Of a DNA stretch of 30,061 bases, positions 1 to 30,061 are shown piece by piece (position 1 is the first letter of the stretch; each line of letters opens with the position of its first letter). The stretch is taken from positions 1-30,061 of IMG/VR virus record IMGVR_UViG_3300014914_000026; one strand, written 5' to 3'. The notes beneath the pieces were generated by a model. It saw nothing but the letters and a program-made list of their open reading frames with translations. It had not been told where the DNA came from and did not search any database. A program made the position numbers and the translations under genes.

Positions 1-123
1 AGCGGATCAGAATGCCTCAAAATACTCGGAGCCATAGACAGAATACTAAGCCTTTTTCCCACAAAGCCATAAGCACCCAACACCAAAAGGCTTAAATACA
101 CCAAACAACACAAAATTTTTTCG
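1..123. repeat. Left inverted terminal repeat (123 bp)
   Basis: Bases 1-123 are the exact reverse complement of 29939-30061; identity ends after ...caaaattttttcg. Confidence 0.97.
83..102 (+). promoter_or_regulatory. Archaeal BRE/TATA promoter inside the left ITR
   Basis: ccaaaaggCTTAAATAcacc with TATA at 92-98, about 37 nt before the ATG at 135; near-identical copy at 18493-18512. Confidence 0.7.
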
Positions 124-134
124 AGGGAAGGGTC

Positions 135-825: not shown

Positions 826-1193
826 AGGCTGAAATATATCTCGGTAAGTATCTCAGAGAGAATTGTTTAGGAGCATCTATGGATTTGAATCAGAGCAAGC
901 TGTTTGTTGTTTATCCTTATATAGGTTATTCAACTGATGAAAAAGTCGTGGAAAAAGGAGAAGACTACATAATATTGAGAATCAAAAGTATAGATAGCGT
1001 AGAGCCTGATAAAATTGTTTTAGGTATTGAGGATGATAATTTCTGGCCAGTAATCATTAGACTTAACCAAGATGAGGTTAAGAAGTTAATTAAGGCTTTA
1101 AATGATTGTCTTAAAGCTTTAGAGAAAGGAATAGAAAAATTAGAAGGTCAAATATATGTCAGAATAGGAGATAGTGGAGGTAATAAGGTATGA
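822..1193 (+). CDS. Hypothetical protein
   Basis: 123-aa ORF coupled by ATGA overlaps at both ends. Confidence 0.7.
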   Translation: MKAEIYLGKYLRENCLGASMDLNQSKLFVVYPYIGYSTDEKVVEKGEDYIILRIKSIDSVEPDKIVLGIEDDNFWPVIIRLNQDEVKKLIKALNDCLKALEKGIEKLEGQIYVRIGDSGGNKV

Positions 1194-1729
1194 TTAGAAA
1201 TTTAAAGAAGACTGTAAAGGATAAGTTATCTTCTATTATAATTTTCGTTAGGGGTGAAGAGGAAAAGAAAGGAGAGATTATTTTGAGGAAGGGGACTAAG
1301 ATAACATGCCCAAATTGTAGTGTTGTAATTGCTGTTGCTAAGAGAGATATAAGAAGTGGTGAAACTATTGATTCTGAGAATGTAAAATGGTTAATAAAGC
1401 AATTTAGAAGAGGTGATGAGTTGAGTTGTCCTTTGTGTTCTGCTCCAGTTGGATTAGATTTGGGATTTAAGAGTAAAGAAGGTGAGAAGGTATATGTTGG
1501 GTCTATTATACACACTTCTGAGGGATGGGTTCCAAAGCCTGTTTATGAATTGATGAAGAGTAAGGTTGATTCTGCTGTTAGGAGAAATATAAGAATATCG
1601 AGGAGGCATAGACCTCTTAGTAGTTTTAAGGGTAAGGGTTTGAGAAAGTTGGCAAGTAGAAGTAAGAGGACGAGGGTTTATGAGAGGAGGGCGGGTTTTG
1701 ATTGGAGGAAGAGGATTGAGGAGGATTAG
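1190..1729 (+). CDS. Zn-finger protein with basic C-terminal tail
   Basis: CPNC...CPLC pair; R/K-rich C-terminus. Confidence 0.7.
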   Translation: MIRNLKKTVKDKLSSIIIFVRGEEEKKGEIILRKGTKITCPNCSVVIAVAKRDIRSGETIDSENVKWLIKQFRRGDELSCPLCSAPVGLDLGFKSKEGEKVYVGSIIHTSEGWVPKPVYELMKSKVDSAVRRNIRISRRHRPLSSFKGKGLRKLASRSKRTRVYERRAGFDWRKRIEED

Positions 1730-1730
1730 C

Positions 1731-1807
1731 GGGTCAGTAGCTCAGTCAGGTAGAGCGTCGGGCTTTTAACCCGAAGGGCGGGGGTTCAAATCCCCCCTGA
1801 CCCGCCA
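1731..1807 (+). tRNA. trnK: tRNA-Lys (anticodon UUU), intron-less, CCA encoded
   Basis: Acceptor GGGTCAG/CTGACCC; D arm GCTC/GAGC; anticodon arm TCGGG-CTTTTAA-CCCGA (TTT at 1765-1767); T arm GGGGG-TTCAAAT-CCCCC; discriminator G then CCA. Confidence 0.95.
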
Positions 1808-1818
1808 AGGTGGTGGTA

Positions 1819-1959
1819 ATGGGTTGGGTTATACCCTTTATGTTCTTGAGTTTTGGTTTGTATGGCTTTTTATATGTTGTTTTTAAGTGTCTTTTTTCTC
1901 CTGAGAGTTGTGAGGAGATAGGTAATCATTCTTGGTTTCTTGAGAAGTGTTCTGAATGA
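1819..1959 (+). CDS. Small single-TM membrane protein (46 aa, not in ORF track)
   Basis: Manual translation MGWVIPFMFLSFGLYGFLYVVFKCLFSPESCEEIGNHSWFLEKCSE; GGTGGTGG RBS right after the tRNA; overlaps the convergent 1883-2086 ORF. Confidence 0.45.
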   Translation: MGWVIPFMFLSFGLYGFLYVVFKCLFSPESCEEIGNHSWFLEKCSE

Positions 1960-2630: not shown

Positions 2631-2837
2631 TCCCACTATAACTCCGCTACAGAACTCCGCTATGTCTCCGCTTGTCTCTTCGTAGGCTTCTCCATTCATT
2701 AGGTCTAAGATTTGCTTTAGGATGAAGAGAGCCGAGAGGAGAATAGTGTAGCCTAAACCTCCAAAGATTGTTGATAGCAGTCCAAGTAGGAAGTGGCATA
2801 TACTACCGATGTCAAGACCTACCTTTGTCGCCTTCAT
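2586..2837 (-). CDS. Small multi-TM membrane protein
   Basis: Probable start MKATKVGLD; hydrophobic helices around H-F-L-L-G and E-E-T-S-G-D motifs; directly follows the protease gene. Confidence 0.6.
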   Translation of the reverse strand: MKATKVGLDIGSICHFLLGLLSTIFGGLGYTILLSALFILKQILDLMNGEAYEETSGDIAEFCSGVIVGLVLLKILLFYAPFQ

Positions 2838-3603
2838 ATTTCCATCTAAGTCTTTCAAGTATTCCCATCCTACTTAAAGGTTTAACCCTCTTTCTCCAAG
2901 CTCTCCTTATAGCTTCATATTTTTCTCTTGTTTCTTTGAGCTTCCTCCCCAATTTTAGGTATTCTTTTATACCCATAGATTCACTTCCTCCTATCCATTC
3001 ATAGTAATGTGTATTATTGAATTTGACCCATGCGTGATATCTTAGTTCATTCATGTTCCACCAGTTGGTTTCTGGGTCTATTTCTGGATATTCCTCTGGG
3101 ACTTCATCAAGGGTGCTTTCCACCAGATACCACTTGTCTGATTCTGGGTCGTGAACTATAGGCCATGCGTGTCCGCCTAATATTTTGTCTCCTTTGTATA
3201 GGTATCCGAGACATTGATAGGCTTCTACTCCTATTATTAGGCATCCTCCTACTATGGCTATACTTGAGCCGTCGCAATCTCCTACTAATGTTGCTACTAC
3301 TTCACTTACTTTGTCCCAGTAGTCCGCTGTTAGAGTCCAGCATCTCTTATATTTTCCGAAGTATGCGTTATATGTATGTTTATCATCTGGAAGACCCATT
3401 CTGAAAGGATATTCTACCCTTTCTATGACTTTACGTGCTACTTGTCTCCATGTGGTTAATCCACCGAAGAACTCTTGACATATTTCTGAGTCTATATCAA
3501 GAAGTTCATTTAATTTGAATTTCCAGAATCTTTTAGCCTCTACTTTATCACCAACTTCTTTAGCACCTTTGAAAATTGGAAATTCAGTTTCTTTCCAAGT
3601 CAT
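2812..3603 (-). CDS. Transglutaminase-like (papain-fold) cysteine protease
   Basis: GDCDG (Cys), GGHAW (His) and WYLVEST (acidic residue) in the order typical of transglutaminase-like/BTLCP proteins; GGTGA RBS. Confidence 0.75.
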   Translation of the reverse strand: MTWKETEFPIFKGAKEVGDKVEAKRFWKFKLNELLDIDSEICQEFFGGLTTWRQVARKVIERVEYPFRMGLPDDKHTYNAYFGKYKRCWTLTADYWDKVSEVVATLVGDCDGSSIAIVGGCLIIGVEAYQCLGYLYKGDKILGGHAWPIVHDPESDKWYLVESTLDEVPEEYPEIDPETNWWNMNELRYHAWVKFNNTHYYEWIGGSESMGIKEYLKLGRKLKETREKYEAIRRAWRKRVKPLSRMGILERLRWKYEGDKGRS

Positions 3604-3619
3604 ATACCATCACCACTTA

Positions 3620-4327
3620 TTACATGCTTGTATAGTAGATTATATATACAGCTCCATCTCCTCCTTTCCCTCCATCACCACCACCTGCGTATAGGCTACC
3701 TCCTCCACCTCCACCTCCTGCTCCTGGAGATGAACCAGGTTCTCCTGATTCGCCTTTATCTCCTGTAACAGTCGATCCTCCATCTCCTCCAGATGCTATA
3801 TTGTTGGGTGTGTCAGCTCCTTTTCCTCCCTTGGTGTTCCCTGTTTCTCCTGAACTTCCAGATAGCATCGATATTTCTGAGTTTATAGCATATCCTGAAG
3901 GTGATCCTCCACCACCACCTGCTCCTGCTCCACCACTATTTGCTTTACCTCCTCCACCTCCTGAGCCTCCTCCTGCTGTAAGCCCAAAAGCAGTTGTATC
4001 TCCCCCTGCTGAACCTGGAGAGCCATTTTCATCTACAGCTCCTCCACTTCCTCCACTACCTCCTGCTCCTACTGTTATTGAATATGAAGAACCTGGAGTT
4101 ACTGGAATTCCTCTCGCTATTATAACCGCTCCTGAACCTCCTCCTCCACCACTACTTCCCGCAGATGAAGAACCTCCTCCACCTCCACCTCCTCCACCGC
4201 CTCCTCCAACTATTATTACATCGATTACATGAACGTCTTGTGGTGCTACCCATGTGTATGTTCCAGGTGTTGTAAAGGCATCTACCTTCTTTTTTATTGT
4301 AAACTTGATTGGATGTATTAGGCTCAT
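3620..4327 (-). CDS. Glycine-rich virion/tail-fibre-type protein
   Basis: FTTPGTYTWVAP...VIIVGGGGGGG...VTPGSSYSITVGAGG...GGDGAVYI matches the glycine-rich domain of phage tail proteins. Confidence 0.8.
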   Translation of the reverse strand: MSLIHPIKFTIKKKVDAFTTPGTYTWVAPQDVHVIDVIIVGGGGGGGGGGGGSSSAGSSGGGGGSGAVIIARGIPVTPGSSYSITVGAGGSGGSGGAVDENGSPGSAGGDTTAFGLTAGGGSGGGGGKANSGGAGAGGGGGSPSGYAINSEISMLSGSSGETGNTKGGKGADTPNNIASGGDGGSTVTGDKGESGEPGSSPGAGGGGGGGSLYAGGGDGGKGGDGAVYIIYYTSM

Positions 4328-4331
4328 ATTT

Positions 4332-4700
4332 TTATATCACCTCCATTACTTGTAGTATGAATAAGTATGGGAATGACCTTGGAGTTCCTGCTGTTTGAGT
4401 TATTGTTACTCTGAATTTTGCGTCGTAGGAGCATGTTATAGCAGGAATTCTGACTATAGGTATAGTTTGAGAGCCAGTAAATTTGAGTTCATCTGTTTTT
4501 CTTTGATTTGTTCCATCGACAGCAATATAGGTTCTTATTATAACTTCGTCTCCCTCTGCCATATTGCTTAGGTCTATTTGCCCCTCTATAATGTAGTCAT
4601 CAGACTGGTCTTCTAAGTTAATTATGTCTGTCTCCGTGTTAAGAGATTCTAAAGTAAGTGTTCCCTTGTATCTCTCTTTTCGTGCTATTCTAACTGGCAT
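4332..4700 (-). CDS. Putative beta-sandwich structural protein
   Basis: 122 aa with alternating beta-strand pattern; co-transcribed with fibre-type genes; GGTGG RBS. Confidence 0.55.
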   Translation of the reverse strand: MPVRIARKERYKGTLTLESLNTETDIINLEDQSDDYIIEGQIDLSNMAEGDEVIIRTYIAVDGTNQRKTDELKFTGSQTIPIVRIPAITCSYDAKFRVTITQTAGTPRSFPYLFILQVMEVI

Positions 4701-4710
4701 ATTTGTCCAC

Positions 4711-5292
4711 CTATCTTGTGAACTGGATGTAGTATCTTATTGTGAGAGTGTCTCCAGCGTCCCAGTCTATTGGGACTGCTGAGAATACTTTTCTTGCGAG
4801 TAGGTCTCCTCCTGCTGATGCGTTGAATACTCCTGCTTCTGATATGTTCATTGTTCCTGAGAGTCCATCTGCTGAAGAGAATGTTGCTTCAAGTTTAGCT
4901 GTGTCTCCTGATACTGATGTGGTCTCCTGTGATACAGTAGCGGATTTTCTTATGATTTCAGCCTCCAATTCAGTATCAGTTACCGCTTCGGATGTGGTTC
5001 CTGAGCCTATGCCAAGGTATCCGAATTTATCTTCTGTCAATCCAGCGAAGACTAGTCTTACTATACATGCTAGACCTACATTTGTGATTACGTTTTTCCT
5101 CCAGTATTCTAAGTCTATAAGTTTGGCTGGGAAGCTTGAGAAGGGACAGTCTCCAGCATCATCATCGATTAGTGGATTGGGTCTTAGGATTCTTCTTGGG
5201 GGTGCTCCTATGTGGTATTTAACTTTTCCATCTTTATCTTTGACTATGATTTCCACATATCCACTTATCTTACCGAAGTCCTTTGCGGACAT
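4711..5292 (-). CDS. Phage tail-fibre/collar N-terminal-domain-like protein
   Basis: Start reassigned to MSAKDF (GGAGGT RBS). NVITNVG...LGIGSGTT...DTELEAE..RK...EAGVFNA...LLARKVF...DTLTIRY resembles the tail-fibre anchoring domain of tailed phages (P2 gpH N-terminus/DUF3751-like). Confidence 0.65.
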   Translation of the reverse strand: MSAKDFGKISGYVEIIVKDKDGKVKYHIGAPPRRILRPNPLIDDDAGDCPFSSFPAKLIDLEYWRKNVITNVGLACIVRLVFAGLTEDKFGYLGIGSGTTSEAVTDTELEAEIIRKSATVSQETTSVSGDTAKLEATFSSADGLSGTMNISEAGVFNASAGGDLLARKVFSAVPIDWDAGDTLTIRYYIQFTR

Positions 5293-5367
5293 ACCTCCTC
5301 TATAAATGTGAGGAGAGGAGGGATTATTTATAAGTTTTGGAATTGATTTAATGGGGTTGGAAGAACT

Positions 5368-8300
5368 GTGGGTTGGCTTAGTGGATGGCAATATAGAAAA
5401 AGCCATGAAATAGAAGGCTCTACTGCTGGTGCGGTTACAGATTATCAGATAGGTATTAAAGTTTATAGAAGCACAGGGACAGATGGAACTGAAACAGAGA
5501 GTCTAATAACATGGGGTGTTGTATATGTTGGAACTAAATGTAGAGAAGATTTTGGAGACATAAGATTCACAGCAGATGATGGTGAAACCCTCTTAGACTA
5601 TTACATGGAGGAATATGAGTATGGTTCTTGGGCTAAATTCTGGGTGAAGATACCTTCTATACCTGCTAGTCCTGACTCTGTTACTATATATGTTTATTAT
5701 GGAAACTCTGATGCGACATATTCAGGAAGTGGAGAAGATACTTTCCAATTCTATGAAGATTTTGAAGATGGAACTTTGGGTTCTACACCTCCAGGCTGGA
5801 CTGTAGAAGGAAGTAGTGGAGACTATTTCCATGTGGATGACACTCATGTAAAGCAGGGTAGCAAAAGCGGTAAGTTACATGAAGATGGTGATGGAGAAGA
5901 ACTATCAGTTAAAGCTCATAAACATGAGACATCTACTGGTGGAGGAGCGGTTGTCCATGCCTGGATGATATTCAGCGGAGATAGGTCTGCCATAGCAGGA
6001 CTGGAACCTGGAGGATCAACCTCAGATTACTATGCCTCATACCTCCTATGTAGAGATGACAAAGACGACTGGAGACGTAACTCTGGTGGAACATTTTACA
6101 CGATTACAGAGTTCTCGGCTCCTTCAGACTTGGTGTGGTATAGACTGGAGATTTATCATCGCCCATCAGATGGTAAAGTTAAATATGTAAAGGATAGAAC
6201 CGAGGAATCAGATTGGGTTGATCCAAGAAGCTCTTGGAGTGAGATAGATGGAGTCCTTTTAAAAAGCCACTATAGGTATCCTGCTGACTCATGGTGGGAT
6301 CAAATCTATATTAGAAAGTATATAGACCCTGAGCCTAGTCATGGTTCCTGGGGAAGTGAGGAAACCTCTGGAGTATCTTATGTTCAGGAAATAACTGATG
6401 TAGGAAAAGTAGGAGATGCGTTATCAAGGGGAATAATTGATGTGGAAAAAGATTCGGGAAAGAGTGTAGATAGCTTAGTTCGTATTGTTGCTTTTCATAA
6501 AAGTGTTGTTGATATTGGTAAAGGTGTTGATAGTTTGAGTAAGTTTGTGGAATATTATAGAAGTTATATGGATGTGGGGAAAGGTTTAGATTCACTTAGT
6601 CTTACTGTTAATTATGTTAGGAGTTTTATTGATGTGAGTAAAGGATTAGATTACATTAGTATGTTTAGAGAAGTGTATAGAGATGTTATGGATAGAGTTT
6701 ATGGTGAGTTTTGGTTATCGACTTTTAGAGGAAAATCATTTTATGAAACTGTGAAAAGTGTTGATTTCATATCTAAGGATTATGATGGAAGACTAAGAGA
6801 TTCTGTTTTAGGTATAGATACTATTGGAAGAGATTTTGAGAAAGTCTATATTGATTATGGAATGGTCGCTGATTTTATCTCTAAAAGACCTCTTAAAAGT
6901 TTGGTTGATAGCTCTTTAGCTGTTGATTATTTTGAGAAGGTTGTAGAGTTTGTTAGAACGCTTTTTGATACTGGGGTTTCATCAGATTATCTTAAGAAGG
7001 AAATTGGAAAGTTAGCTAAAGATGTTGGAAAGACTGTTGATTATGTGGAGAAAACTCCAGCTAAGGTGTTAGTTGATACAAGTAGGATAATTGATTGGTA
7101 TAGTAAGTTTGCCTCTAAAATATTTTTCGATACATTTATTTCATTAGATTATCTTAGGAAAACTCCTGCTAAAAAGGTTGTTGATGTTGGGAAGGTTTCA
7201 GATTGGTATTGTAAGCTGGTTTCAGAATCCTTAATTGACACTTGTAAAGGTGTTGATTGGTATAGTAAAACTTCAACATTCTACAGAAGCTTTACAGATA
7301 TAGGCAAAACTGTAGATTACATAGAAAAAATGTCCATGAAGGCTCTCCTTGATATTGTTAAAAACATTGATTGGTTTACTAAGACTGCTATATTCTACAG
7401 GAACTTGTATGAGTTTGTAAATACCTCTGATTATTTAGCTAAAGATGTGCTTAGAAGTTTCCTTGATTATGCTGTTGGTGAGTTTTTGATTTCAAGTCTT
7501 CGTGGTAAGACCTTCAGGGAGACAATTAGAACTTTTGATTATCTATATAGAAACATTCTAAAAGTTTATGTTGATATTGGTAGAGCTTCTGATTACTTGA
7601 GAAAAGATAGAACCAAACCCATAAGTGATGTCTTTAAGGTTTTGGATTATGTTAAAAAGGAATCATTAAAATGTTTTGTTGATATAGGGAGGTCAGTTGA
7701 TTTCTTGTATAAAGAGTTCTTGAAAAGGACTTTTGATTCTGTGAGCGTTACTGATTGGTTTTTAAAGTTTGCTGTGAAGTTGTTTAGGGATGTTGTTTTA
7801 GGAAGGGATTGGTCTCTTAGAGATTCGCTTAAAGTCTTGTTGGAATTATGTAAAGGTTTAGACTATTTGAGTAGAGACACCACTAAGAGCTATTTGGATT
7901 ATAGTATATGTTCAGATTTTGTTTTGTTAGATATTGTGAAGTCCTTAGTTGAAGTTAGTAGAAGCTTTGACTATACCAGTAAAAGTATTCTTAGGAATTT
8001 CATTGATTATGCTTATGGTGAGCATTTCTTATCGACATTAAAGGGAAAGGAACTTAAAGATTATGTGAAAGTTTTTGATATTCTAAGTAGGGATTACTTG
8101 AAACTATTTTTTGACTTAATGAAGGGTGTTGATTTTATATATAAAGATTATGGCAAGAGGTTTGAGGAGTCCATTATAGGTGTAGATTTTGTTGAGAAAG
8201 GTTTTGGAATAAGACTTGAAGAGACAACAAAAGTGTATGAAAAAATTAATAGAGATATTTTGAAGAGCCTAATAGATTTGGGTAGGTCTCTTGAGCTATT

Positions 8301-8952
8301 TTACAAGGATGTGATTAAGAGTGTAATTGAGTATGTTAGTATATCAGATTACCTTAGTAAGGGTATTTCTAGAATTTTTGAGTTTGAAGCTCCTGTAGTT
8401 GGATATGTCTATCATATAAGAGGTAAGGGTTTCTATGAGACTGTAGGTGTTTCGGATAGAAGTATGATAGATGTAAACAAAAGATTTGTGGAATCTTTGA
8501 AACTTATTGAGAAAATGGCTAAGGATTATTCAACTTTGATAGATTTGGAAGTTTTGGGGAAAGGATTTACATCTAAGGATGTTACAAGTTCAATTATTGA
8601 GTTTGGAAGGGTATTAGAGCCTATTTTTAGTAGAGATATTTTAAGAGCTTTTAAGGAGTGGATTATTGTAAGAGATAAATACTGGAGAAAGATCATTGTT
8701 ACACTTGTAGATTATATACTGGATACTGGTGGAGTGGCAAGAGGTGTATCGAGACCTCTTAGGGATAAGGGTAAGGGAGTAGATGTTTTGACTAAAGTGG
8801 CTTATACGCTTGCTGGTCAAGATGTTAGAAGAGTTTACTGGCATAAGGTTTGGGGGGATATTATAGAGCCATCTGACCATAACTTAAATATAGAGGCTTG
8901 TAAAGTTATTCTTGAGGCGATGAAAAGAGTTAAAGATAAGTTGGGTGAATAG
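5368..8952 (+). CDS. Large adhesin/fibre protein: N-terminal DUF2341, lectin-like beta domain, long 18-20-aa repeat stalk
   Basis: WLSGWQYRK...DFGDIRFT..DG.TLLDY..E...FWVKIPSIPA...IYVYYGN is the DUF2341 pattern; aa ~335-1150 are D-x-G-K-x-x-D-(Y/W/F)-x-x-K repeats. Confidence 0.75.
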   Translation: MGWLSGWQYRKSHEIEGSTAGAVTDYQIGIKVYRSTGTDGTETESLITWGVVYVGTKCREDFGDIRFTADDGETLLDYYMEEYEYGSWAKFWVKIPSIPASPDSVTIYVYYGNSDATYSGSGEDTFQFYEDFEDGTLGSTPPGWTVEGSSGDYFHVDDTHVKQGSKSGKLHEDGDGEELSVKAHKHETSTGGGAVVHAWMIFSGDRSAIAGLEPGGSTSDYYASYLLCRDDKDDWRRNSGGTFYTITEFSAPSDLVWYRLEIYHRPSDGKVKYVKDRTEESDWVDPRSSWSEIDGVLLKSHYRYPADSWWDQIYIRKYIDPEPSHGSWGSEETSGVSYVQEITDVGKVGDALSRGIIDVEKDSGKSVDSLVRIVAFHKSVVDIGKGVDSLSKFVEYYRSYMDVGKGLDSLSLTVNYVRSFIDVSKGLDYISMFREVYRDVMDRVYGEFWLSTFRGKSFYETVKSVDFISKDYDGRLRDSVLGIDTIGRDFEKVYIDYGMVADFISKRPLKSLVDSSLAVDYFEKVVEFVRTLFDTGVSSDYLKKEIGKLAKDVGKTVDYVEKTPAKVLVDTSRIIDWYSKFASKIFFDTFISLDYLRKTPAKKVVDVGKVSDWYCKLVSESLIDTCKGVDWYSKTSTFYRSFTDIGKTVDYIEKMSMKALLDIVKNIDWFTKTAIFYRNLYEFVNTSDYLAKDVLRSFLDYAVGEFLISSLRGKTFRETIRTFDYLYRNILKVYVDIGRASDYLRKDRTKPISDVFKVLDYVKKESLKCFVDIGRSVDFLYKEFLKRTFDSVSVTDWFLKFAVKLFRDVVLGRDWSLRDSLKVLLELCKGLDYLSRDTTKSYLDYSICSDFVLLDIVKSLVEVSRSFDYTSKSILRNFIDYAYGEHFLSTLKGKELKDYVKVFDILSRDYLKLFFDLMKGVDFIYKDYGKRFEESIIGVDFVEKGFGIRLEETTKVYEKINRDILKSLIDLGRSLELFYKDVIKSVIEYVSISDYLSKGISRIFEFEAPVVGYVYHIRGKGFYETVGVSDRSMIDVNKRFVESLKLIEKMAKDYSTLIDLEVLGKGFTSKDVTSSIIEFGRVLEPIFSRDILRAFKEWIIVRDKYWRKIIVTLVDYILDTGGVARGVSRPLRDKGKGVDVLTKVAYTLAGQDVRRVYWHKVWGDIIEPSDHNLNIEACKVILEAMKRVKDKLGE

Positions 8953-8954
8953 GG

Positions 8955-9089
8955 ATGAAGGATTTAATTGCTAAGTTGATGTTGCTATATTTATATGCTA
9001 AACCAGAGGGAAGTCGAAGTTGGCTTCATTTAAAGTTTGGTGTTAAGAAGATATTAGAGGTGTTAGAGAAGGATGGGAAGCTTGAGTGA
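8955..9089 (+). CDS. Small hypothetical protein (44 aa, not in ORF track)
   Basis: MKDLIAKLMLLYLYAKPEGSRSWLHLKFGVKKILEVLEKDGKLE fills the gap between co-oriented genes; GGGTGA RBS. Confidence 0.5.
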   Translation: MKDLIAKLMLLYLYAKPEGSRSWLHLKFGVKKILEVLEKDGKLE

Positions 9090-9414
9090 AAAGATAAGCA
9101 ATCTGGAGGATTTGATTTCAAAGATGGAGTATGTAGAGGAAGGAGACTATGTATTTGCCAAGCATATTAATAATTTAAATGAAGCAAGTAAAATTGTTTT
9201 AGATTTCTGTAAGGAGGCTTATGATAAGTATAAGGAGAAGACTGGGGAGACTTTAGATGATGTAGAATTATGGCTTTATTTAGCTGAGAATAGAATTAAT
9301 ATGATGCGTTCTGTTAAGTATGGTGATATTGTTTTGACTAAAGATCATAACTTGATTATTGATAGTTTAAAGCCTTTGGAATTGGTTTTGAGAAGGCTTG
9401 AACAAAAACTTTAG
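9073..9414 (+). CDS. Helical protein with two GDxVxxxxxN motifs (putative fibre adaptor)
   Basis: EGDYVFAKHINNL and YGDIVLTKDHNLI resemble WGDIIEPSDHNLN at the end of the 1194-aa protein. Confidence 0.6.
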   Translation: MGSLSEKISNLEDLISKMEYVEEGDYVFAKHINNLNEASKIVLDFCKEAYDKYKEKTGETLDDVELWLYLAENRINMMRSVKYGDIVLTKDHNLIIDSLKPLELVLRRLEQKL

Positions 9415-10493
9415 AGGTATATTTTGACTACATCTCTTAATTTTTCACCTATTTTGTCCCAAGTTAAGTTGGGTCTTATGAATTTTTCTATGTGTTCCTT
9501 TACTTTTGCTTTGTATTCTTCATAATTGTTGAAGATTTCTATAGTTCTATCTACTGCTTTATCAATTATCATTTCAACCCCATATCCTATATGAATTGGA
9601 TTTGATGGTAAGACTTTATCGCTCTTTTTTGAGGGAATTAATGACCATTCAGGCATGTATTCCTCCCATGCTCCACCTTTTGCTCCTATTACTGGAACCC
9701 CTCTTGTTAGTGCTTCCATAGGTGGATGTTCCCACCCTCCTCCTCTTGATGTTAATGCGTATAGATCGCATAGATCGAAGAGTTCCATTTTTTGTTGTTC
9801 TGTAAGCCATCCAGATAATACTCTTCCTTCCATTTGGTATTTGGGTTTTCCTTTTTTGTATTCGATTGTTTCTGGGAAGTATCCTACAGCGTTTGCTGAT
9901 TTTACTACAAGTAGAACATTATTGTATTCTTTAAGTAGAGCTTGATAGTATCTTAGTAGTATGTCAAGTCCTTTCCTATATGGGCTATGAACTATGAAGC
10001 TTAGTATTAGTTTTAGGTTTCTTCGTTCCTTGAGTTTTGCTAAATGTTCAAATAGATTTGGAGGTTGTTTAGGGGCATCTATCCATTGTTCATCTATTCC
10101 ATGAGGTATTACATGAACTGGTTTTTTAACTCCTGATTTTATGTATGTTTCCTTAGATTTTTTGGATGGAACTATGAAGGCTTTTGCGTATTTAGTTAAT
10201 TTTACTGCGTATGGTGATAGTCTATCTGTATCTGCTACATCTACTCCTATTAATCCTGATGACCGACTAACTTTCTGTGCTAGTCTTTTTTCTAATTTTT
10301 GGAATAGGTAGAAGTATGGTTGTATTATTATTAGAGGTCTTGTGGTCATTGATATGTAAGGAAATGCTAGTTCATCTATTAGTTCTATTCTATAGTATTT
10401 TTTGAGTTGTTCATAATGTTTCATTCCAATTACATTAAAGCTAACTTTGTGATAAAAGGGAAACACATACCAAATTGATGTCGCTCTCATCAT
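9411..10493 (-). CDS. GT-B (GT4-like) glycosyltransferase
   Basis: IVPS..S, VIPHGID, RKGLDILL, SRGGGWEHPPMEALTRGVPVI. Confidence 0.9.
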   Translation of the reverse strand: MMRATSIWYVFPFYHKVSFNVIGMKHYEQLKKYYRIELIDELAFPYISMTTRPLIIIQPYFYLFQKLEKRLAQKVSRSSGLIGVDVADTDRLSPYAVKLTKYAKAFIVPSKKSKETYIKSGVKKPVHVIPHGIDEQWIDAPKQPPNLFEHLAKLKERRNLKLILSFIVHSPYRKGLDILLRYYQALLKEYNNVLLVVKSANAVGYFPETIEYKKGKPKYQMEGRVLSGWLTEQQKMELFDLCDLYALTSRGGGWEHPPMEALTRGVPVIGAKGGAWEEYMPEWSLIPSKKSDKVLPSNPIHIGYGVEMIIDKAVDRTIEIFNNYEEYKAKVKEHIEKFIRPNLTWDKIGEKLRDVVKIYL

Positions 10494-10828
10494 AGTCTTA
10501 TGGCATACCAGTATATTTTAACGTTATCGCTTCCAGATGGAGGAGGCGATGAATAATGAACTATTATCTCTGTGTCGGTTACTTCGTAATGGCTATATCC
10601 TGAAGCGTCTTGACTTCCAGCCCCAATTATAGCGATAGTGGGTTTGGCTGATAAGCCGTGTGGAATATGAAACTCTGTTTTGGCTCCATCTCCTGAGAAT
10701 ACTGCTAATCCACCATTTCTCTCTATTGGTGCTCTCTTATCAAGCTCCTCTAAAGCATCTACTACTGCGTTCCATTCCTCTGGTGTCAATATTTCAGTTC
10801 CTTTATATGTTAGACCCCACTTACTCAT
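10490..10828 (-). CDS. Small fibre-tip/H-lectin-like structural protein
   Basis: N-terminal GTEILTPEEWNAVVDAL; C-terminal SGDG..TEF.IPHGL...P...IYWYA beta domain typical of fibre tips. Confidence 0.6.
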   Translation of the reverse strand: MSKWGLTYKGTEILTPEEWNAVVDALEELDKRAPIERNGGLAVFSGDGAKTEFHIPHGLSAKPTIAIIGAGSQDASGYSHYEVTDTEIIVHYSSPPPSGSDNVKIYWYAIRL

Positions 10829-10989: not shown

Positions 10990-13900
10990 CTACATCCCCC
11001 TTTGTCTTCTTGCTAAGTATCTTGCTCTTCTCATTCCTCCTATGGCTTTATAGAACATTATCTCATAATCATCAAGACCCCATTCTTTAAGTGCTTCAAG
11101 TTCTTTGACAAACTCTTCTTCTGTTATTATTCCACTTGCGAAGTCTGATAGTAGCTCAGTTATGTATCTTCTGACTTCATCCATTATTGGTTTGAGCCTT
11201 ATGAACTGCTCCCACATTGCCTTCAGGACATTCTTTGTTTCTTCATCTACTGGTAGAGCGTCAATCATCTTGTATAATTGTCCGAGGGCGTATGACCTTG
11301 CTTGTGGTGAATACTCTGATAGCATCACCATTCTATCTACATCGCCTACCAGTTCTCTAAAGGCTCTATAGTGTCTTTCGTATCTTGAGGATGTCAGCAT
11401 TAGTTCTAGTTCTTTGTCTGTGTATCCGAAGTTCTTTAGCTGGTTTAGTATCTTTTTGTAGTCGTCTTCTGTTATTATGAAGTAAACATATAGGTCTTCT
11501 GCTCTTGAAATCATCTTCTTTACTTCGTCCATTATGGGTCTGAGGTCTATGTATTCAGCCCATATTGGTTGCCACTTCTCAGGTATCCTTTTAGCTTTGA
11601 CTACATCATCAAAGTATTCTCTTGCTTTTGGTATGTATTCTGATATTGTTGCGAGCATAGATGGTGTGGGTATGTATTCTCTCATTGATTGTCTTGCTTG
11701 AAGTATCATTTCTTCGAGTTCTACTCTTAGTTTCAGTATCTCCATTTCTTTATCTGTGAAGTTTATCATTTCCATGTATTCCTTAATCTTGCTTTCTATG
11801 TCCTCTGGTATCTTTATGTAGATTAAGGCTCTTCTGTAGGTGGTTAGAAGGCTCTTAATATCGTCAGCAATCGGCCTTATTTCGATATATTGCTTCCAAA
11901 TGGGCTTCCATTCATCTGGGACTAGTCTCTCGGTTAGGGCTTTGTCGATTAGGTCTTCCTTGATTACAAGGTATTCAGAGAGGGTGGCAAGCTGAGTTGG
12001 GGTGGGGATGTATTCCCTTATCGCTATGTTTACCATTCGGTCTAGAACTCCCTTTATGAACTCCTTTTCATAGTCTGTTAGTTTGGCTTTTTCTCCAACA
12101 TAATCTGCGAGTGCTTCTACATCCTCCCTTTTTACTACTCCAGTTGTAACTCTATACATCACATATCCAAGCCATCTTTGTGTCCAATACCTGACTCTTC
12201 TTATTGTGTAGATGTCTCTCCAGATGTTTAAGGAGTTTATGTATGCTGAGTAGTATTCCTCCACGAAGGCAAGTTTAAGTTCATCTGGTAGTTTTACTCC
12301 TGTTATTTTTTCATAATCCTTTGCGAAGAACTCATTTATTTTTTCGATTATGCCTGTTAGCTTCTCTTTGAACTCTTCATAGTTTTGTATGATGAATTCT
12401 GAATAGCCTCTGCTAAGGTCTCTTACTGTGTCTCTTAGTATGTCTAATGCTCTATCCATTAAGGCTCTAAGTTCAAGTAGTTTCCTTTCTGGAGGTAGAT
12501 ACATAACTGGATAGTTTACCCATCCAGTAACCCATTTGTTTTCTGAGGTGTCGAAGTATGAAACTTTGAAGCTTGCTGTTATGAAACCTGCGAGTAGTTT
12601 TTCAAGAGCGTTTATATTCCAAAAGCCTTCTTTGAATAGGTTGATGAATCCAGTCCTTAGTAGTGTTCTTTCATCTACTAAGGTGTTTATAGTTTCTGCT
12701 ACTGCTGTTAGAGGAACCCAATCTGGATGGAGACCTGTTGCCTGTAGGGTTCTTGAGAATAGTGATAGGTCGAGCTTTATTTCTGAGCTTGCTGATGGCT
12801 CTATTAGTTTCTCTCTAAAGGCTGATACTGGGGAAGTTATCTTGACTCCCCTTTCAGATAATATATTGTAGAGACCCCATCGGGTCATCCATCGCTGATC
12901 AATCTTTGTGGGTATGTCTGCGAGGGTATCTATCACTATAAGGTTGTCCGATGTGAAGCCTTTAATCCATGAGAATCTGGCATAGTCATGCCATTTCATG
13001 TAGGTCTTAAGAGCATCAAATAGCTTTGAGTATTTGAAGTTAAGTTCTATTGGTGCTATTGGTGTGAAGGCTCCTATTGTTTGTGCTACTTTCTCTAATG
13101 CTCTTCTCTCAGAGTCGGATATTGAGACCCATAGCATACCGCTTATACCTCTTGATATGAAGCTCCAGAGTCTTTCTGGGGAGGCGTATCTGAAGTGTAG
13201 GAGGTAGTAGAGATAGGCTATGTCTGGAATCATGCCTTGGGTTTGTATTGCCTTAGTAAAGTCTTCAAGTGAGTAGAATAGGTCTCTAACCATCATTCTA
13301 CATAGCTCTGAGGATGTGGGGAGCTTATGGACTAGACTCAAGGGTATGTTTCTGAATGTTCCGAATCTGTCTTTGACTTTGATCCACATATCTGGTGTGT
13401 ATTTGAAGAACCAGTCTAAAGTTACATCAGAATGTCCATAGATTGATAGGAAGAATTTTGCGATTTTGAGGATTTCCTTATACCTTTCTGTTGGTTTAAC
13501 TTCTCTGATTACACCTGTTGTTGGGTCTTTCTGTATTATGTAAGCCATGTTCCTTCTCAGGAACTCTATTATCTCATCATCTCTGGGAGCTATTATTGGG
13601 AGAACATTTCTCAACCAGTAGTTTATGAGCCTTCCAATAGGTCTTGTCAGCCATATAGCATATCCATATATCATACCTCGCCCTAGTTCATCCATCCATC
13701 TTCCAATATTAGTTGCGAATGTGTATAGTGAAGCCCCTATAATCTTTGATATGTCGATTTCAGTCTCATAGCCTATACCGAGAGGCTTTAGACTGATTTT
13801 ATGTTTCCATCCAAGTTCACCTATAGACCTTGCTACACCTCTCATTACCCATTGAGCCATTCTGAGGGGTATTTGAGCATAGAAGGGTATCCATGATACA

Positions 13901-15564
13901 GTCATGGCGTATATGCTACCTGTTGTAATAGCTTTCTTAACATAGTCTATTTTGAAGTATTCTGGGGTAGCCATTTGTTCTGCCTTAAGTATTTCCTCAT
14001 ATTTCTGTATTAGAAATTCATGTGTTTGTGATGCTATGGATTCTGGTAGTGGTTTAAGATAGTGCTCTGCTAATGGCTGTATAGCTTTACCTGACTTTTC
14101 CATTACTTGTATTGTTGAGTCCCAAAATTCCTTTGTTATTTCTGATATTATATTTGCCACACCTTTTTGTATATTTTGAAGTGAATCCCAGAAGAACTTG
14201 AGGAGATTCTGAAGACCTGATACTAATGCCTCTGACAGAGTTTTTATTTCTCCCCAGAATATATTGAATATTGATTTAAGGTTCACTCTTATCTCAGCAA
14301 ATATTTGGGGACTCATCCAAATTGATGGTAGAGAAGTTAGGGGAGTTGTAATGTATTCATTGAACCATTCTGGGAACCACGTTGGGAAGTTCATTATTGC
14401 GTTTACGAATCCTTGTGTGGTTTGGGCTAGTGAGTTAAAGCCTTTTGTTACATTGTCGATTATTTCTTTGAGTCCCTCCTGGAAGGGCTTTATTATACCT
14501 TCATTTATTGAATCAAATAATGGCTGTATTGTTGTAGCCCATGCTTTTTCTATTATATTGCTGTATATTGCTGGTGCTTCTTCTTTAAGGTTTACTAAGT
14601 ATTGAATGAATCCTGTTATGGTCTCTCCTATTTGTGATATTCCCATAATGGCTGTTACTATTCCTTCTGTTATTTGTGGGATACTTTCTAACCATCCTCT
14701 AAAGGTTTCAGTTATTGGTTCCATAAGGCTTTGTAATGTTGTGAATATTTGAGTTATTCCATTTATTATTGTGTCTGGTATTGTCGTTATTAGATTTATG
14801 ATGGGCTGTATTGCTTCGATTATAGAGTCAGGTATTGTTGATAGAAAATCTGTAACATTTGATATTAGTGATTCTATGCCAGATATACCTTTTTGTATCA
14901 TATCTGTAAGAGATTTTCCAAGTTTTTCTGTTAATGATTCGAGACTGCTGAATACTCCACTTATTGCTTCACCTATGTTGGTAATATAGTCAGATATTGA
15001 TGAAATAGCCTTTTGAATAACATTATTTAAGCTTTCTCCTAATGCCTGGAGATTATCTATAAGTCCTTGAGCAAGTTTACTTAAGCTATCAAATACACTA
15101 TTTAGACTGTCAAGAAGACTTGATGCGAGGTCTTTTAGTCCTTCAAATTGTTCTGAAACCCATTTAATGGCATCATATATAGGGTCTAGAACTACTGGTG
15201 CTATTTTTTGGACTTCACTCCAGATGTTTGTTATTGTAGAGTTTATAGTGTTTAAGATTGGTTTTATTGCTGTTTCAATGAAGGTTTCTATGCCAGATAT
15301 TATCCATGAGGCTATTGAACTAAGAATATCTGCGAACCAGTCTTTTAGTTGTCCAATTGGATCAACTATTCCTCCTACACCTGAAACTATTAGGTCTAAA
15401 TCTATTTCTTCTATTGTATATATGTCGGTTACTGTGATTGATAACGATTCCTTTTTTGGGAGATTAAGAGTAATCTGAGGTGGATTTGAGATGAGTATGT
15501 CGGATAGGATTTGGGCTGTTTTCTTTATCTCCTTGGGGTCTAACTCCTCCCTGATGGAGGACAT
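10990..15564 (-). CDS. Large minor virion protein (rudivirus terminal-fibre-like) with amphipathic helical N-terminal repeats
   Basis: 1524 aa, all-helical; C-terminal repeats REYIPTP..LAT.SEY...W..Y...RPI.D; size and position in the structural operon match the largest rudiviral virion protein. Confidence 0.6.
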   Translation of the reverse strand: MSSIREELDPKEIKKTAQILSDILISNPPQITLNLPKKESLSITVTDIYTIEEIDLDLIVSGVGGIVDPIGQLKDWFADILSSIASWIISGIETFIETAIKPILNTINSTITNIWSEVQKIAPVVLDPIYDAIKWVSEQFEGLKDLASSLLDSLNSVFDSLSKLAQGLIDNLQALGESLNNVIQKAISSISDYITNIGEAISGVFSSLESLTEKLGKSLTDMIQKGISGIESLISNVTDFLSTIPDSIIEAIQPIINLITTIPDTIINGITQIFTTLQSLMEPITETFRGWLESIPQITEGIVTAIMGISQIGETITGFIQYLVNLKEEAPAIYSNIIEKAWATTIQPLFDSINEGIIKPFQEGLKEIIDNVTKGFNSLAQTTQGFVNAIMNFPTWFPEWFNEYITTPLTSLPSIWMSPQIFAEIRVNLKSIFNIFWGEIKTLSEALVSGLQNLLKFFWDSLQNIQKGVANIISEITKEFWDSTIQVMEKSGKAIQPLAEHYLKPLPESIASQTHEFLIQKYEEILKAEQMATPEYFKIDYVKKAITTGSIYAMTVSWIPFYAQIPLRMAQWVMRGVARSIGELGWKHKISLKPLGIGYETEIDISKIIGASLYTFATNIGRWMDELGRGMIYGYAIWLTRPIGRLINYWLRNVLPIIAPRDDEIIEFLRRNMAYIIQKDPTTGVIREVKPTERYKEILKIAKFFLSIYGHSDVTLDWFFKYTPDMWIKVKDRFGTFRNIPLSLVHKLPTSSELCRMMVRDLFYSLEDFTKAIQTQGMIPDIAYLYYLLHFRYASPERLWSFISRGISGMLWVSISDSERRALEKVAQTIGAFTPIAPIELNFKYSKLFDALKTYMKWHDYARFSWIKGFTSDNLIVIDTLADIPTKIDQRWMTRWGLYNILSERGVKITSPVSAFREKLIEPSASSEIKLDLSLFSRTLQATGLHPDWVPLTAVAETINTLVDERTLLRTGFINLFKEGFWNINALEKLLAGFITASFKVSYFDTSENKWVTGWVNYPVMYLPPERKLLELRALMDRALDILRDTVRDLSRGYSEFIIQNYEEFKEKLTGIIEKINEFFAKDYEKITGVKLPDELKLAFVEEYYSAYINSLNIWRDIYTIRRVRYWTQRWLGYVMYRVTTGVVKREDVEALADYVGEKAKLTDYEKEFIKGVLDRMVNIAIREYIPTPTQLATLSEYLVIKEDLIDKALTERLVPDEWKPIWKQYIEIRPIADDIKSLLTTYRRALIYIKIPEDIESKIKEYMEMINFTDKEMEILKLRVELEEMILQARQSMREYIPTPSMLATISEYIPKAREYFDDVVKAKRIPEKWQPIWAEYIDLRPIMDEVKKMISRAEDLYVYFIITEDDYKKILNQLKNFGYTDKELELMLTSSRYERHYRAFRELVGDVDRMVMLSEYSPQARSYALGQLYKMIDALPVDEETKNVLKAMWEQFIRLKPIMDEVRRYITELLSDFASGIITEEEFVKELEALKEWGLDDYEIMFYKAIGGMRRARYLARRQRGM

Positions 15565-19617: not shown

Positions 19618-19992
19618 TTAGTATGGCATCACCCAGCCTGCGATGACCTGTATAATCTCATCGCAGACTGAGGGATCGAGGCCATAGGCGTTCACATAGT
19701 AGCTCTTGAGACCAGAGCTGATCTTCTTGCCAGCATCACCCTTCTGGCGGACTATATGCCTCAGAAGGGCGAGGCCGAAGGCGAGGTAGGTCGCCCTCAT
19801 ACCACCAGTAATGCCATACTCATCGAGGATCGGCCTCACCAAGTCCCTGGCGGTGGCAACCATGTTTAGACCTTCCTGTGCTCTATCGACGGCGATGCTC
19901 TGGACATCCGTGAACCTAGTCCCTATGACGGTGGGGTTGAACTTTGCCTGATACTTCTTCCACATATCCAGACCAGTCTTATAGAGTGGCAT
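19618..19992 (-). CDS. Major capsid protein, SIRV2/Adnaviria fold
   Basis: KYQAKFNPTV...ILDEYGITGGMRATYLAFGL...GLKSYYVNAYGLDPSV..II.VI.G aligns by eye with rudivirus MCP (KWQAKF..NPTV...LTQYGITGPNRAIYQGFGL...GLKGYYISAFNANPQV); GGAGGTGA RBS. Confidence 0.92.
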   Translation of the reverse strand: MPLYKTGLDMWKKYQAKFNPTVIGTRFTDVQSIAVDRAQEGLNMVATARDLVRPILDEYGITGGMRATYLAFGLALLRHIVRQKGDAGKKISSGLKSYYVNAYGLDPSVCDEIIQVIAGWVMPY

Positions 19993-29929: not shown

Positions 29930-29938
29930 GTCTATCCC

Positions 29939-30061
29939 CGAAAAAATTTTGTGTTGTTTGGTGTATTTAAGCCTTTTGGTGTTGGGTGCTTATGGCTTTG
30001 TGGGAAAAAGGCTTAGTATTCTGTCTATGGCTCCGAGTATTTTGAGGCATTCTGATCCGCT
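29939..30061. repeat. Right inverted terminal repeat (123 bp)
   Basis: Exact reverse complement of 1-123. Confidence 0.97.

What the first reader, a model, noticed from the sequence alone, without database searches (positions are those of the whole stretch)
8845..10810. A shared docking-like motif in three different proteins (four copies)
Seen: WGDIIEPSDHNLNIEACKVI (C-end of the 1194-aa adhesin), EGDYVFAKHINNLNEASKIV and YGDIVLTKDHNLIIDSLKPL (113-aa protein), and GTEILTPEEWNAVVDALEEL (N-end of the 112-aa tip protein). It resembles the 'GDxITAxxLN' segment that starts many phage tail fibres. Inference: a modular plug by which different adhesins attach to the virion end, with the two-copy protein as adaptor; two copies plus one would complete a heterotrimeric bundle. 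In the large adhesin it is C-terminal, the reverse of usual fibre polarity.
Basis: partly seen in the sequence, partly recalled or inferred. Interest (0 to 1): 0.6.

Follow-up and report, generated by a model that had tools for sequence, protein, structure and literature searches.

The report
Split three-hairpin connector of rudivirus adhesins
In this uncultured rod-shaped archaeal virus, the tail end of a giant adhesin and the small protein encoded next to it together carry three copies of an undescribed helical-hairpin module that most likely snap into one six-helix bundle, a reusable connector that related viruses attach to many different binding domains.

Summary
The window is a near-complete 30-kb linear rudivirus-like genome with 126-nt inverted terminal repeats. 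Three are clearly homologous: the C-end of the 1194-aa protein and the two copies in the 113-aa protein. Each is a roughly 50-aa helix/GD..(D)HN turn/helix module. The fourth, at the N-end of the 112-aa protein, is only a remote half-module (profile-profile P about 1e-4).

The module is an uncatalogued family: 395 representative proteins, with no Pfam, PHROG or PDB relative. It occurs at N-ends or C-ends of DUF2341 and beta-propeller proteins, in one, two or three copies.

- Natural relatives fuse the three modules, in the same order, into one chain.
- Ten of ten loci of 9.9 kb or more carry exactly three copies.
- The complex model scores ipSAE 0.77, against 0.00 for the best control.
- The fused form folds as a trimer-of-hairpins bundle.

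Not supported are the 113-aa protein as adaptor for the 112-aa protein, and the likeness to tailed-phage fibre starts. Attachment to the virion end remains an inference. This is a new variant of a known kind.

The parts
5368..8952 (+). p1194, the large adhesin-like protein. It has an N-terminal DUF2341 domain (aa 61-146), a stalk of about 40 copies of an 18-aa repeat (about aa 370-1140), and a C-terminal module A.
   Evidence: ORF and translation. PF10102 at E 3.7e-21. Repeat period 18 by autocorrelation. SIRV2 ORF564, next to ORF1070, is also annotated as a DUF2341 protein.
8791..8949 (+).
   Evidence: HMM hits. Conserved in 13 orthologous tails. Residues 1155-1157 and 1165-1194 form the predicted interface with p113.
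9073..9414 (+). p113, a small protein made of modules B (about 9079-9237) and C (about 9259-9411), i.e. hairpins 2 and 3 of 3.
   Evidence: Translation. Two HMM domains. 12 database clusters plus C10 and C7 orthologues. AlphaFold2 model with pLDDT 81 and pTM 0.70, a helix/turn/helix unit twice over. It is separated from p1194 by 120 nt that are in frame but hold six stop codons.
10490..10828 (-). p112, a small tip-like protein. Its C-terminal domain is a lectin-like beta domain (aa about 35-112).
   Evidence: Translation. N-end 70-90% identical in 26 clusters. P16, W19, N20, D24, A25, L26, L29 and R32 are near-invariant in 117 sequences. Remote likeness to the module. The C-domain is shared with beta-helix proteins of the bin and with phage tail proteins. 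Atlas leads are H_lectin, Gp53-like_C and K1-lyase_C.
9411..10493 (-). GT4-type glycosyltransferase lying between p113 and p112. It is a conserved neighbour and not part of the module.
   Evidence: PF00534, PF13439 and phrog_2170 at E 4e-47. Same position in C10, C7, L010 and L018.
10990..15564 (-). p1524, a giant minor structural protein, a candidate P1070-like protein. It is a candidate platform for the terminal proteins.
   Evidence: phrog_7334 on the C-terminal part and tape-measure-like N-terminal part. Its last 267 aa are 72% identical to C10, against 45% for the rest. Role of P1070 as stated in 10.1101/2023.08.24.554615.
19618..19992 (-). Rudivirus-type major capsid protein, which identifies the replicon.
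   Evidence: PF12193 at E 2.4e-21. 33-40% identity to Rudiviridae capsid proteins.
1..126 (.). Left inverted terminal repeat. Its partner is 29936-30061.
   Evidence: 126 nt, 99% complementary. The window is the whole contig C5.

Best explanation
The motif marks a roughly 50-residue helical-hairpin module: helix 1, a G-D-x-[VI] turn, a (D)HN helix cap, then helix 2. Three such hairpins pack into one pseudo-threefold six-helix bundle, a trimer of hairpins. The three second helices form the core and the three GD..HN turns meet at one end.

In this virus the bundle is split between two polypeptides. The 1194-aa adhesin supplies hairpin A at its extreme C-end. The 113-aa protein encoded immediately downstream supplies hairpins B and C, so the two proteins lock together 1:1.

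The completed bundle is a portable connector. In related uncultured rudivirus-like viruses it sits at either end of DUF2341, beta-propeller and other binding domains. It therefore most likely forms the virion-proximal anchor of terminal adhesins, while the variable domain points outward.

The N-end of the 112-aa protein is a distant half-module (turn plus core helix only). It is not part of this bundle. It is a separate conserved docking or oligomerisation segment for the protein encoded after the giant P1070-like gene.

Shown by computation: the homology of copies 1-3, the family and its architectures, the fusions, the count of three, the predicted interface and the fold. Inferred: that the bundle anchors to the virion terminus, which end is proximal, and the role of p112.
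For: 1. Homology. Shuffle tests and HMMs. The profile finds 395 representative proteins at E<=1e-3 and 123 at E<=1e-10 among 1.84 billion.

2. Copy number. The best 150 proteins hold 1, 2 or 3 copies (31, 79 and 40), and none holds more by my recount at i-E<0.01.

3. Rosetta stone. At least 8 representatives carry modules typed A, B, C in that order in one chain. One is P0022, a 512-aa protein with the same repeat stalk. Its tail is collinear with the p1194 C-end plus p113. It lies at the same locus with no separate p113 gene.

4. Sum of three. All 10 loci of 9.9 kb or more hold exactly three copies:
   - C5, C10, C7 and L010 as 1+2.
   - L018, L012, L011, L016 and L017 as 3 in one chain.
   - L013 as 2 plus a separate 54-aa ORF carrying 1.

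5. Complex model of p1194(1100-1194) with p113. Median ipSAE is 0.77, against 0.00 for the best of 3 controls. That mark was reached by 58 of 80 solved complexes and 2 of 110 mismatched pairs; these counts hold only roughly, because my own alignments were used. Partner pLDDT is at least 78 and the runs agree in at least 65% of contacts. The interface joins the three turns and the three second helices. No solved relative exists, so the pass is not from memory.

6. Fold. The natural A-B-C tail folds into six helices (pLDDT 77.5, pTM 0.73). Its best PDB match is the single-chain gp41-5 five-helix bundle 3o3x_A, with Z 14.6, rmsd 2.3 A and 139 residues aligned.

7. Connector role. In the long proteins the module sits at an end, opposite DUF2341 (7 of 62), PQQ, Kelch or FG-GAP propellers and similar domains. 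All seven further contexts read are rudivirus-like, with a giant P1070/tape-measure-like gene and glycosyltransferases, and the capsid gene in one.
Against: - Nothing is experimental. The complex and the folds are models built from shallow alignments of 9-14 rows.
- Z 14.6 is about what helical bundles reach by geometry alone (note).
- Hairpin A's first helix is modelled with low confidence (pLDDT about 60).
- The loci counted are mostly 10-22 kb windows, not whole genomes. Several were chosen through proteins already known to hold two or three copies.
- Fragmentary contigs show 1 or 2 copies (C147, C329, C50).
- No partner on the virion is identified, and nothing shows which end of p1194 is proximal.
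- Cultured SIRV2 and SMRV1 have no detectable module, so the connector is not general to rudiviruses.
Confidence: 0.6

Rival explanations
1. The two-copy 113-aa protein is a general adaptor whose open slot accepts a single copy from either adhesin, the 1194-aa C-end or the 112-aa N-end, so that both attach to the virion through it.
For: The p112 N-end aligns with the turn and core-helix half of the module in one register (P 1.1e-4; reciprocal hits). True modules include 'DWN' variants resembling p112's 'EEWN'. The genes are neighbours.
Against: p112 homologues with the same N-end stand beside fused A-B-C units that have no free slot (L018, L012). The p112 family is about ten times larger than the p113 family. 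p112 lacks helix 1 and the GD turn. The module HMMs do not reach it. Every locus already has three copies without it.
Confidence: 0.1
2. The 113-aa protein is a fibre-assembly chaperone or distal cap, like the Tfa proteins encoded just after tailed-phage fibre genes. It binds the C-terminal, distal tip of the 1194-aa fibre, and the DUF2341 end is the one attached to the virion.
For: The gene lies directly downstream of the fibre gene. It is predicted to bind the fibre's C-end.
Against: Permanent covalent fusions of A with B-C argue for a structural unit rather than a transient helper. The module also occurs N-terminally, before beta-propeller and DUF2341 domains that look like the ligand-binding ends. 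There is no match to any chaperone family in Pfam or PHROGs.
Confidence: 0.2
3. Each single-copy protein homotrimerises through its own hairpin, so three p1194 chains would form a homotrimeric six-helix bundle. On this view the 113-aa protein is an unrelated paralogue that works elsewhere.
For: One-copy proteins exist (31 of 150). Fibre proteins are often trimers (general knowledge).
Against: The single-copy type-A tail is always followed by a type-B-C gene (C5, C10, C7, L010) or fused to B-C. The heteromeric model passes its controls. The homotrimer itself was not modelled.
Confidence: 0.08
4. The likeness is chance or generic coiled-coil composition and has no shared origin or function.
For: The segments are short and helical. 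Copy 4 is near the noise level.
Against: For copies 1-3, z reaches 11 against shuffles. Domain E-values in independent proteins reach 1e-21. G, D and N are invariant across 14 copies. Hundreds of database members exist.
Confidence: 0.02

Closest known systems
N-terminal anchor or adaptor domains of tailed-phage receptor-binding proteins, and their small adaptor proteins (general class, from established knowledge)
   Same: A conserved, portable end-domain is joined to interchangeable binding domains. A small separate protein completes the joint. The genes are clustered with other terminal structural genes.
   Different: There is no sequence or fold relation detectable here. The virus is a filamentous archaeal one. 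The domain can be N- or C-terminal. The joint is one pseudo-trimeric bundle made from three hairpins that may lie in one, two or three chains.
Trimer-of-hairpins six-helix bundle, as in the engineered single-chain gp41-5 (PDB 3o3x)
   Same: The geometry matches: three core helices with outer helices packed in the grooves. An incomplete bundle leaves a groove for the missing hairpin (Z 14.6, rmsd 2.3 A, 139 residues aligned).
   Different: Sequence identity is 10% and there is no homology. Here there is no fusion peptide, membrane anchor or conformational-change role. The loops carry a conserved GD..(D)HN turn. The resemblance is geometric only.
SIRV2 minor structural proteins P1070 (ORF1070) and ORF564 (DUF2341 protein)
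   Same: The giant protein matches phrog_7334, which I take to be the P1070 family; the PHROG carries no name, so this link is not verified. p1194 shares the DUF2341 domain with ORF564. The genes lie side by side in both viruses. P1070 is thought to form the terminal filaments that recognise the host (10.1101/2023.08.24.554615).
   Different: SIRV2 and SMRV1 have no detectable module and no p113. p1194 is twice as long as ORF564, with an 18-aa repeat stalk.
Tail-fibre assembly proteins (Tfa-type) encoded downstream of phage fibre genes
   Same: A small gene directly follows the fibre gene, and its product is predicted to bind the fibre's C-end.
   Different: There is no family match. The small protein is a paralogue of the fibre's own C-end, and in relatives it is fused to it permanently.

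Membership tests
   p113, p112 and the A-B-C tails give no Pfam or PHROG family over the module. Scanning 62 long module proteins in Pfam yields only the fused domains.
   tblastn of p113 (E<=1) and of a canonical three-copy N-end (E<=10) against 50,697 phage records found no match. The BFVD fold search found nothing at E<=0.001. Short motifs can escape these tools.
   It is N-terminal in p112 and in many module proteins, but C-terminal in p1194 and its relatives.
Rudiviridae-like virus (Ligamenvirales, Adnaviria) | Rudivirus-type alpha-helical major capsid protein | tested here: met
   PF12193 at E 2.4e-21. tblastn gives 33-40% identity to 42 Rudiviridae records.
Rudiviridae-like virus (Ligamenvirales, Adnaviria) | Linear genome with inverted terminal repeats | tested here: met
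   126-nt inverted repeats at both ends of the contig.
Rudiviridae-like virus (Ligamenvirales, Adnaviria) | Large P1070-like minor structural protein and GT4 glycosyltransferases | tested here: inconclusive
   Glycosyltransferases are met: phrog_2170 twice, and a short DNA match to the SIRV glycosyltransferase. The giant protein matches phrog_7334 at 4.6e-25, but that PHROG is unnamed and p1524 was never compared with SIRV2 ORF1070, so its identity with P1070 rests on my recollection.
Phage tail-fibre assembly chaperone (Tfa-like) | Sequence membership in a known chaperone family | tested here: not met
   No such Pfam or PHROG hit for p113.
Phage tail-fibre assembly chaperone (Tfa-like) | Gene directly downstream of the fibre gene | tested here: met
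   p113 starts 120 nt after p1194. The spacing is 0-9 nt in C10, C7 and L010.
Class I fusion-protein six-helix bundle | Trimer-of-hairpins geometry | tested here: met
   Z 14.6 to 3o3x_A. This is borderline for helical bundles according to the tool's own note.
Class I fusion-protein six-helix bundle | Fusion peptide, membrane anchor and homology to fusion proteins | tested here: not met
   Sequence identity is 10% and there are no sequence relatives in the PDB. No fusion-protein family was found in Pfam. I do not file it here.
H-type-lectin / gp53-like C-terminal tip domain (for the p112 C-domain) | Fold or sequence match to the family | tested here: inconclusive
   Atlas feature hits are 0.93 to K1-lyase_C and H_lectin clusters. 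Structure TM by the target is 0.67 to a Gp53-like_C cluster. There is no Pfam hit. tblastn matches phage tail proteins at 35-51% identity.

The most novel reading that the evidence does not exclude
An undescribed domain family forms a 'countable' connector. Exactly three hairpins per virus are distributed over one, two or three genes, and they assemble into one six-helix bundle that plugs interchangeable adhesins onto the termini of a large, uncultured clade of filamentous archaeal viruses. Gene fission and fusion of the bundle (3, 2+1, 1+2) would then be the way these viruses swap host-recognition modules. The p112-type N-end would be a second plug derived from the same hairpin.
Probability: 0.4. 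Interest if true: 0.75.

Novelty: new variant of a known kind. Interest (0 to 1): 0.62.

Why it matters
How filamentous archaeal viruses (Adnaviria) build their terminal structures and attach their host-recognition proteins is largely unknown. I know of no atomic model of a rudivirus terminus, and the paper searches run here turned up none. A defined, sequence-recognisable connector would do three things:

- It would let adhesins be picked out in metagenomic virus genomes, as whatever is fused to the module.
- It would give a concrete, small, testable protein pair (113 aa plus a roughly 55-95-aa tail) for structural work.

It also adds a protein family of several hundred clusters that Pfam, PHROGs and the PDB do not cover.

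Tried and rejected
- Read-through of p1194 into p113. The two are in the same frame, but the 120-nt gap holds six stops. Rejected.
- A metal site made of three histidines on the bundle axis. The His is not column-invariant: type B has H-x-N, and only G, D and N are invariant. Dropped.
- Fold search of p113 alone against the PDB gave nothing at E<=0.001. The Atlas search for p113 gave only unnamed clusters and generic helical proteins.
- PDB sequence searches with the module profile and the p112 profile gave nothing below E 0.04.
- PHROG phrog_32316 hit p113 at E 0.0019 over residues 44-77, which is the linker helix and not the motif. Not followed.
- A six-frame scan of SIRV2 and SMRV1 with the module HMM gave no credible hit.
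- The proteins encoded after the giant gene in L016 and L017 look by eye like an intermediate (GD followed by EEW), but neither HMM supports this. I note it only as an impression.
- The last big word search, with the p112 profile, returned only close p112 relatives. It could not test the link to phage tip proteins.
- Paper searches found no description of the module.
Full report
**What the window is.** The 30,061-base window is the whole contig C5 of a 335-contig bin. It ends in 126-nt inverted terminal repeats.

- It encodes a rudivirus-type major capsid protein: PF12193 at 19618-19992 on the minus strand, 33-40% identical to cultured Rudiviridae.
- It encodes a 1524-aa giant protein with a tape-measure-like front and a phrog_7334 C-terminal part. 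I take phrog_7334 to be the P1070 family, but the PHROG is unnamed and I did not check this.
- It also encodes two GT4 glycosyltransferases and a methyltransferase.

It is therefore a near-complete genome of an uncultured, distant rudivirus-like virus. The same bin holds several related viral contigs (C10, C7, C23, C14 and others) with G+C from 36 to 60%. These served as natural comparison material.

**The observation.** The four segments are present as written.

- Three of them are alike well beyond chance: z 4.5-11 against 2000 shuffles. These are the C-end of the 1194-aa protein (p1194) and the two halves of the 113-aa protein (p113).
- The likeness covers about 50 residues: helix 1, a V-x-[YWF]-G-D-x-[VI] turn, (D)HN, then helix 2.
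- An HMM of the three, iterated over all ORFs of the bin, converges on 14 copies in 9 ORFs. G, D and N are invariant.
- The fourth segment, at the N-end of the 112-aa protein (p112), is not reached by these HMMs.
- A profile-profile comparison aligns p112 residues 12-31 with the turn-plus-helix-2 half of the module: P 1.1e-4, probability 56%.
- The p112 N-end HMM hits true modules in the same register. True modules include 'DWN' variants close to p112's 'EEWN'.

I therefore call copy 4 a probable remote half-module, not a fourth full copy.

**The family.** A profile of the 14 copies, scored against 1.84 billion representative proteins, finds 395 at E<=1e-3 and 123 at E<=1e-10.

- Among the best 150, proteins hold one (31), two (79) or three (40) copies, and never more by my recount. 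The search itself listed four stretches in one 140-aa protein.
- The copies are N-terminal, C-terminal or make up the whole protein.
- In the long proteins the rest of the chain is DUF2341 (7 of 62), PQQ, Kelch or FG-GAP beta-propellers, and similar binding-type domains.
- No Pfam or PHROG model, PDB sequence or BFVD model covers the module.
- tblastn finds nothing in 50,697 phage and archaeal-virus records.
- SIRV2 and SMRV1 lack it.
- Seven further genomic contexts were read, and all are rudivirus-like. Each has a giant P1070/tape-measure-like gene, glycosyltransferases and other adhesin-like genes. L012 also has the capsid gene.

**Why the adhesin tail and p113 are one unit.** Four lines of evidence agree.

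At least eight representative proteins carry A-B-C in that order in one chain.
   - One of them, P0022, is a 512-aa protein with the same repeat stalk. Its tail is collinear with the p1194 C-end plus p113.
   - It sits at the same locus, followed directly by the methyltransferase and glycosyltransferase genes, with no separate p113 gene.
   - The split is real in C5. The 120-nt gap is in frame but holds six stops. The split recurs in C10, C7 and L010 with a conserved start.
2. Every locus of 9.9 kb or more carries exactly three copies.
   - C5, C10, C7 and L010 carry 1+2.
   - L018, L012, L011, L016 and L017 carry three in one chain.
   - L013 carries two at the end of an 844-aa protein plus one in a separate 54-aa ORF.
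   - The L013 and L010 cases were not built into how the loci were chosen. Several other loci were found through proteins already known to hold two or three copies, so the count is suggestive and not a census.
3. The complex model of p1194(1100-1194) with p113 scores ipSAE 0.77 (median of three runs), against 0.00 for the best of three controls.
   - That mark was reached by 58 of 80 solved complexes and 2 of 110 mismatched pairs. These counts hold only roughly because my own alignments were used.
   - Partner pLDDT is at least 78, and the runs agree in at least 65% of contacts.
   - The interface joins p1194 residues 1155-1157 and 1165-1194 with p113's first helix, both GD..HN turns and both second helices.
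4. The natural A-B-C tail folds into six helices (pLDDT 77.5, pTM 0.73).
   - Its best PDB match is the single-chain five-helix gp41-5 bundle: Z 14.6, rmsd 2.3 A, 139 residues aligned.
   - This is trimer-of-hairpins geometry. The tool warns that helical bundles reach such Z values by geometry alone, so I use the match only as a description of shape.
   - p113 alone models as four helices, two hairpins. That is the same bundle with one hairpin missing.

**How it most likely works.** Three hairpins make a closed six-helix bundle. In this virus one hairpin is the last 53 residues of the adhesin, and the other two are p113, so p113 clamps onto the adhesin's C-end.

The bundle is found at whichever end is opposite the binding-type domain. 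Examples are DUF2341 at the N-end of p1194, and propellers or DUF2341 after N-terminal triple modules elsewhere. From this I infer that the bundle is the virion-proximal anchor and that the variable domain is distal. This step is inference: no partner on the particle has been identified.

The stalk of p1194 is an 18-residue repeat, about 40 copies long.

**p112.** Its N-terminal 32 residues are the best-conserved part of a family of at least 129 clusters. That family is much larger than the p113 family of 12 clusters.

- The same N-end heads a different 333-aa body in C50 (i-E 2.4e-5).
- p112 homologues stand unchanged beside fused A-B-C units.
- The gene follows the giant protein gene in C5, C10 and C7.
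- The C-domain recurs at the ends of beta-helix proteins in the bin and in phage tail proteins. Atlas leads point to H-lectin, gp53-like and K1-lyase C-domains.

I conclude that p112 is a small lectin-like tip protein with its own conserved docking or oligomerisation segment. It may have descended from the same hairpin, but it is not the third member of the p113 bundle. Its partner was not tested. One candidate is the very conserved C-terminal 267 residues of p1524.

**Comparison and novelty.** Functionally this resembles the conserved anchor domains and small adaptor proteins of tailed-phage receptor-binding proteins. Geometrically it resembles a trimer of hairpins. It is a member of neither by any test run here.

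The family is not in Pfam, PHROGs or the PDB. The literature searches found no description of it.

I rate it a new variant of a known kind: a modular adhesin connector. Its unusual and testable feature is one fold split over one to three genes with a conserved total of three.

**Limits.** All structural statements rest on models from shallow alignments. No experiment bears on any of this. Most loci are partial genomes.

Noticed in passing
window 1-126 and 29936-30061; whole window: The window is a whole contig with 126-nt inverted terminal repeats, so it is a near-complete linear genome. Its capsid protein is only 33-40% identical to cultured Rudiviridae, so it is probably a new genus or family. 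The bin also holds at least five related viral contigs with G+C from 36 to 60%, which suggests a mixed viral and cellular bin.
   Followed up: partly
window 6476-8787 (+), p1194 aa about 370-1140: The stalk of the large adhesin is an 18-residue repeat, about 40 copies long. The orthologue in C10 has only about 400 residues of it, so stalk length varies greatly between relatives.
   Followed up: partly
window 10490-10723 (-), p112 aa about 35-112: The C-terminal beta domain of p112 also ends three pectate-lyase-like beta-helix proteins in the bin (C243, C293, C292). It occurs 8 times in one 484-kb uncultured phage and in a Bacillus phage tail protein, so it is a domain shared between archaeal filamentous viruses and tailed phages.
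   Followed up: partly
window 2812-5406 (-): A divergently transcribed cluster next to p1194 looks like a second adhesin cassette. It comprises a Gp80-like fibre protein (PF23140, weak hit), a 122-aa protein, a glycine-rich protein (PF21722, E 6e-18) and a weak transglutaminase-core hit. The cassette is conserved in C10, L012 and L018.
   Followed up: no
window 10990-11790 (-), p1524 C-terminal 267 aa: The last 267 residues of the giant protein are 72% identical to C10, against 45% for the rest. This is a strongly constrained end, and it lies next to the p112 gene.
   Followed up: no
L008 (C50) 1178-1740 (-) and 4540-5541 (-): This contig has two adjacent one-copy mini-proteins (47 and 138 aa), plus a 333-aa protein with the p112-type N-end. 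It may be a 1+1(+1) version of the bundle. The contig is only 7.3 kb.
   Followed up: partly
L016 5081-5758 and L017 5484-6431: The proteins encoded right after the giant gene begin with a helix followed by 'GD..EEW'-like residues. By eye this looks intermediate between the module and the p112 N-end. It is followed by a 'D-L-I-P-D-x-D ... L-G' stretch reminiscent of phage fibre motifs. Neither HMM supports the likeness.
   Followed up: partly
L005 (C10) 1522-1872 (-): C10 carries a second capsid-protein paralogue, 53% identical to the window's capsid protein. tblastn finds only one capsid gene in the window.
   Followed up: no
L013 3404-4342 (+): A related viral contig encodes a TFIIB-like protein (PF00382) and a dUTPase.
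   Followed up: no
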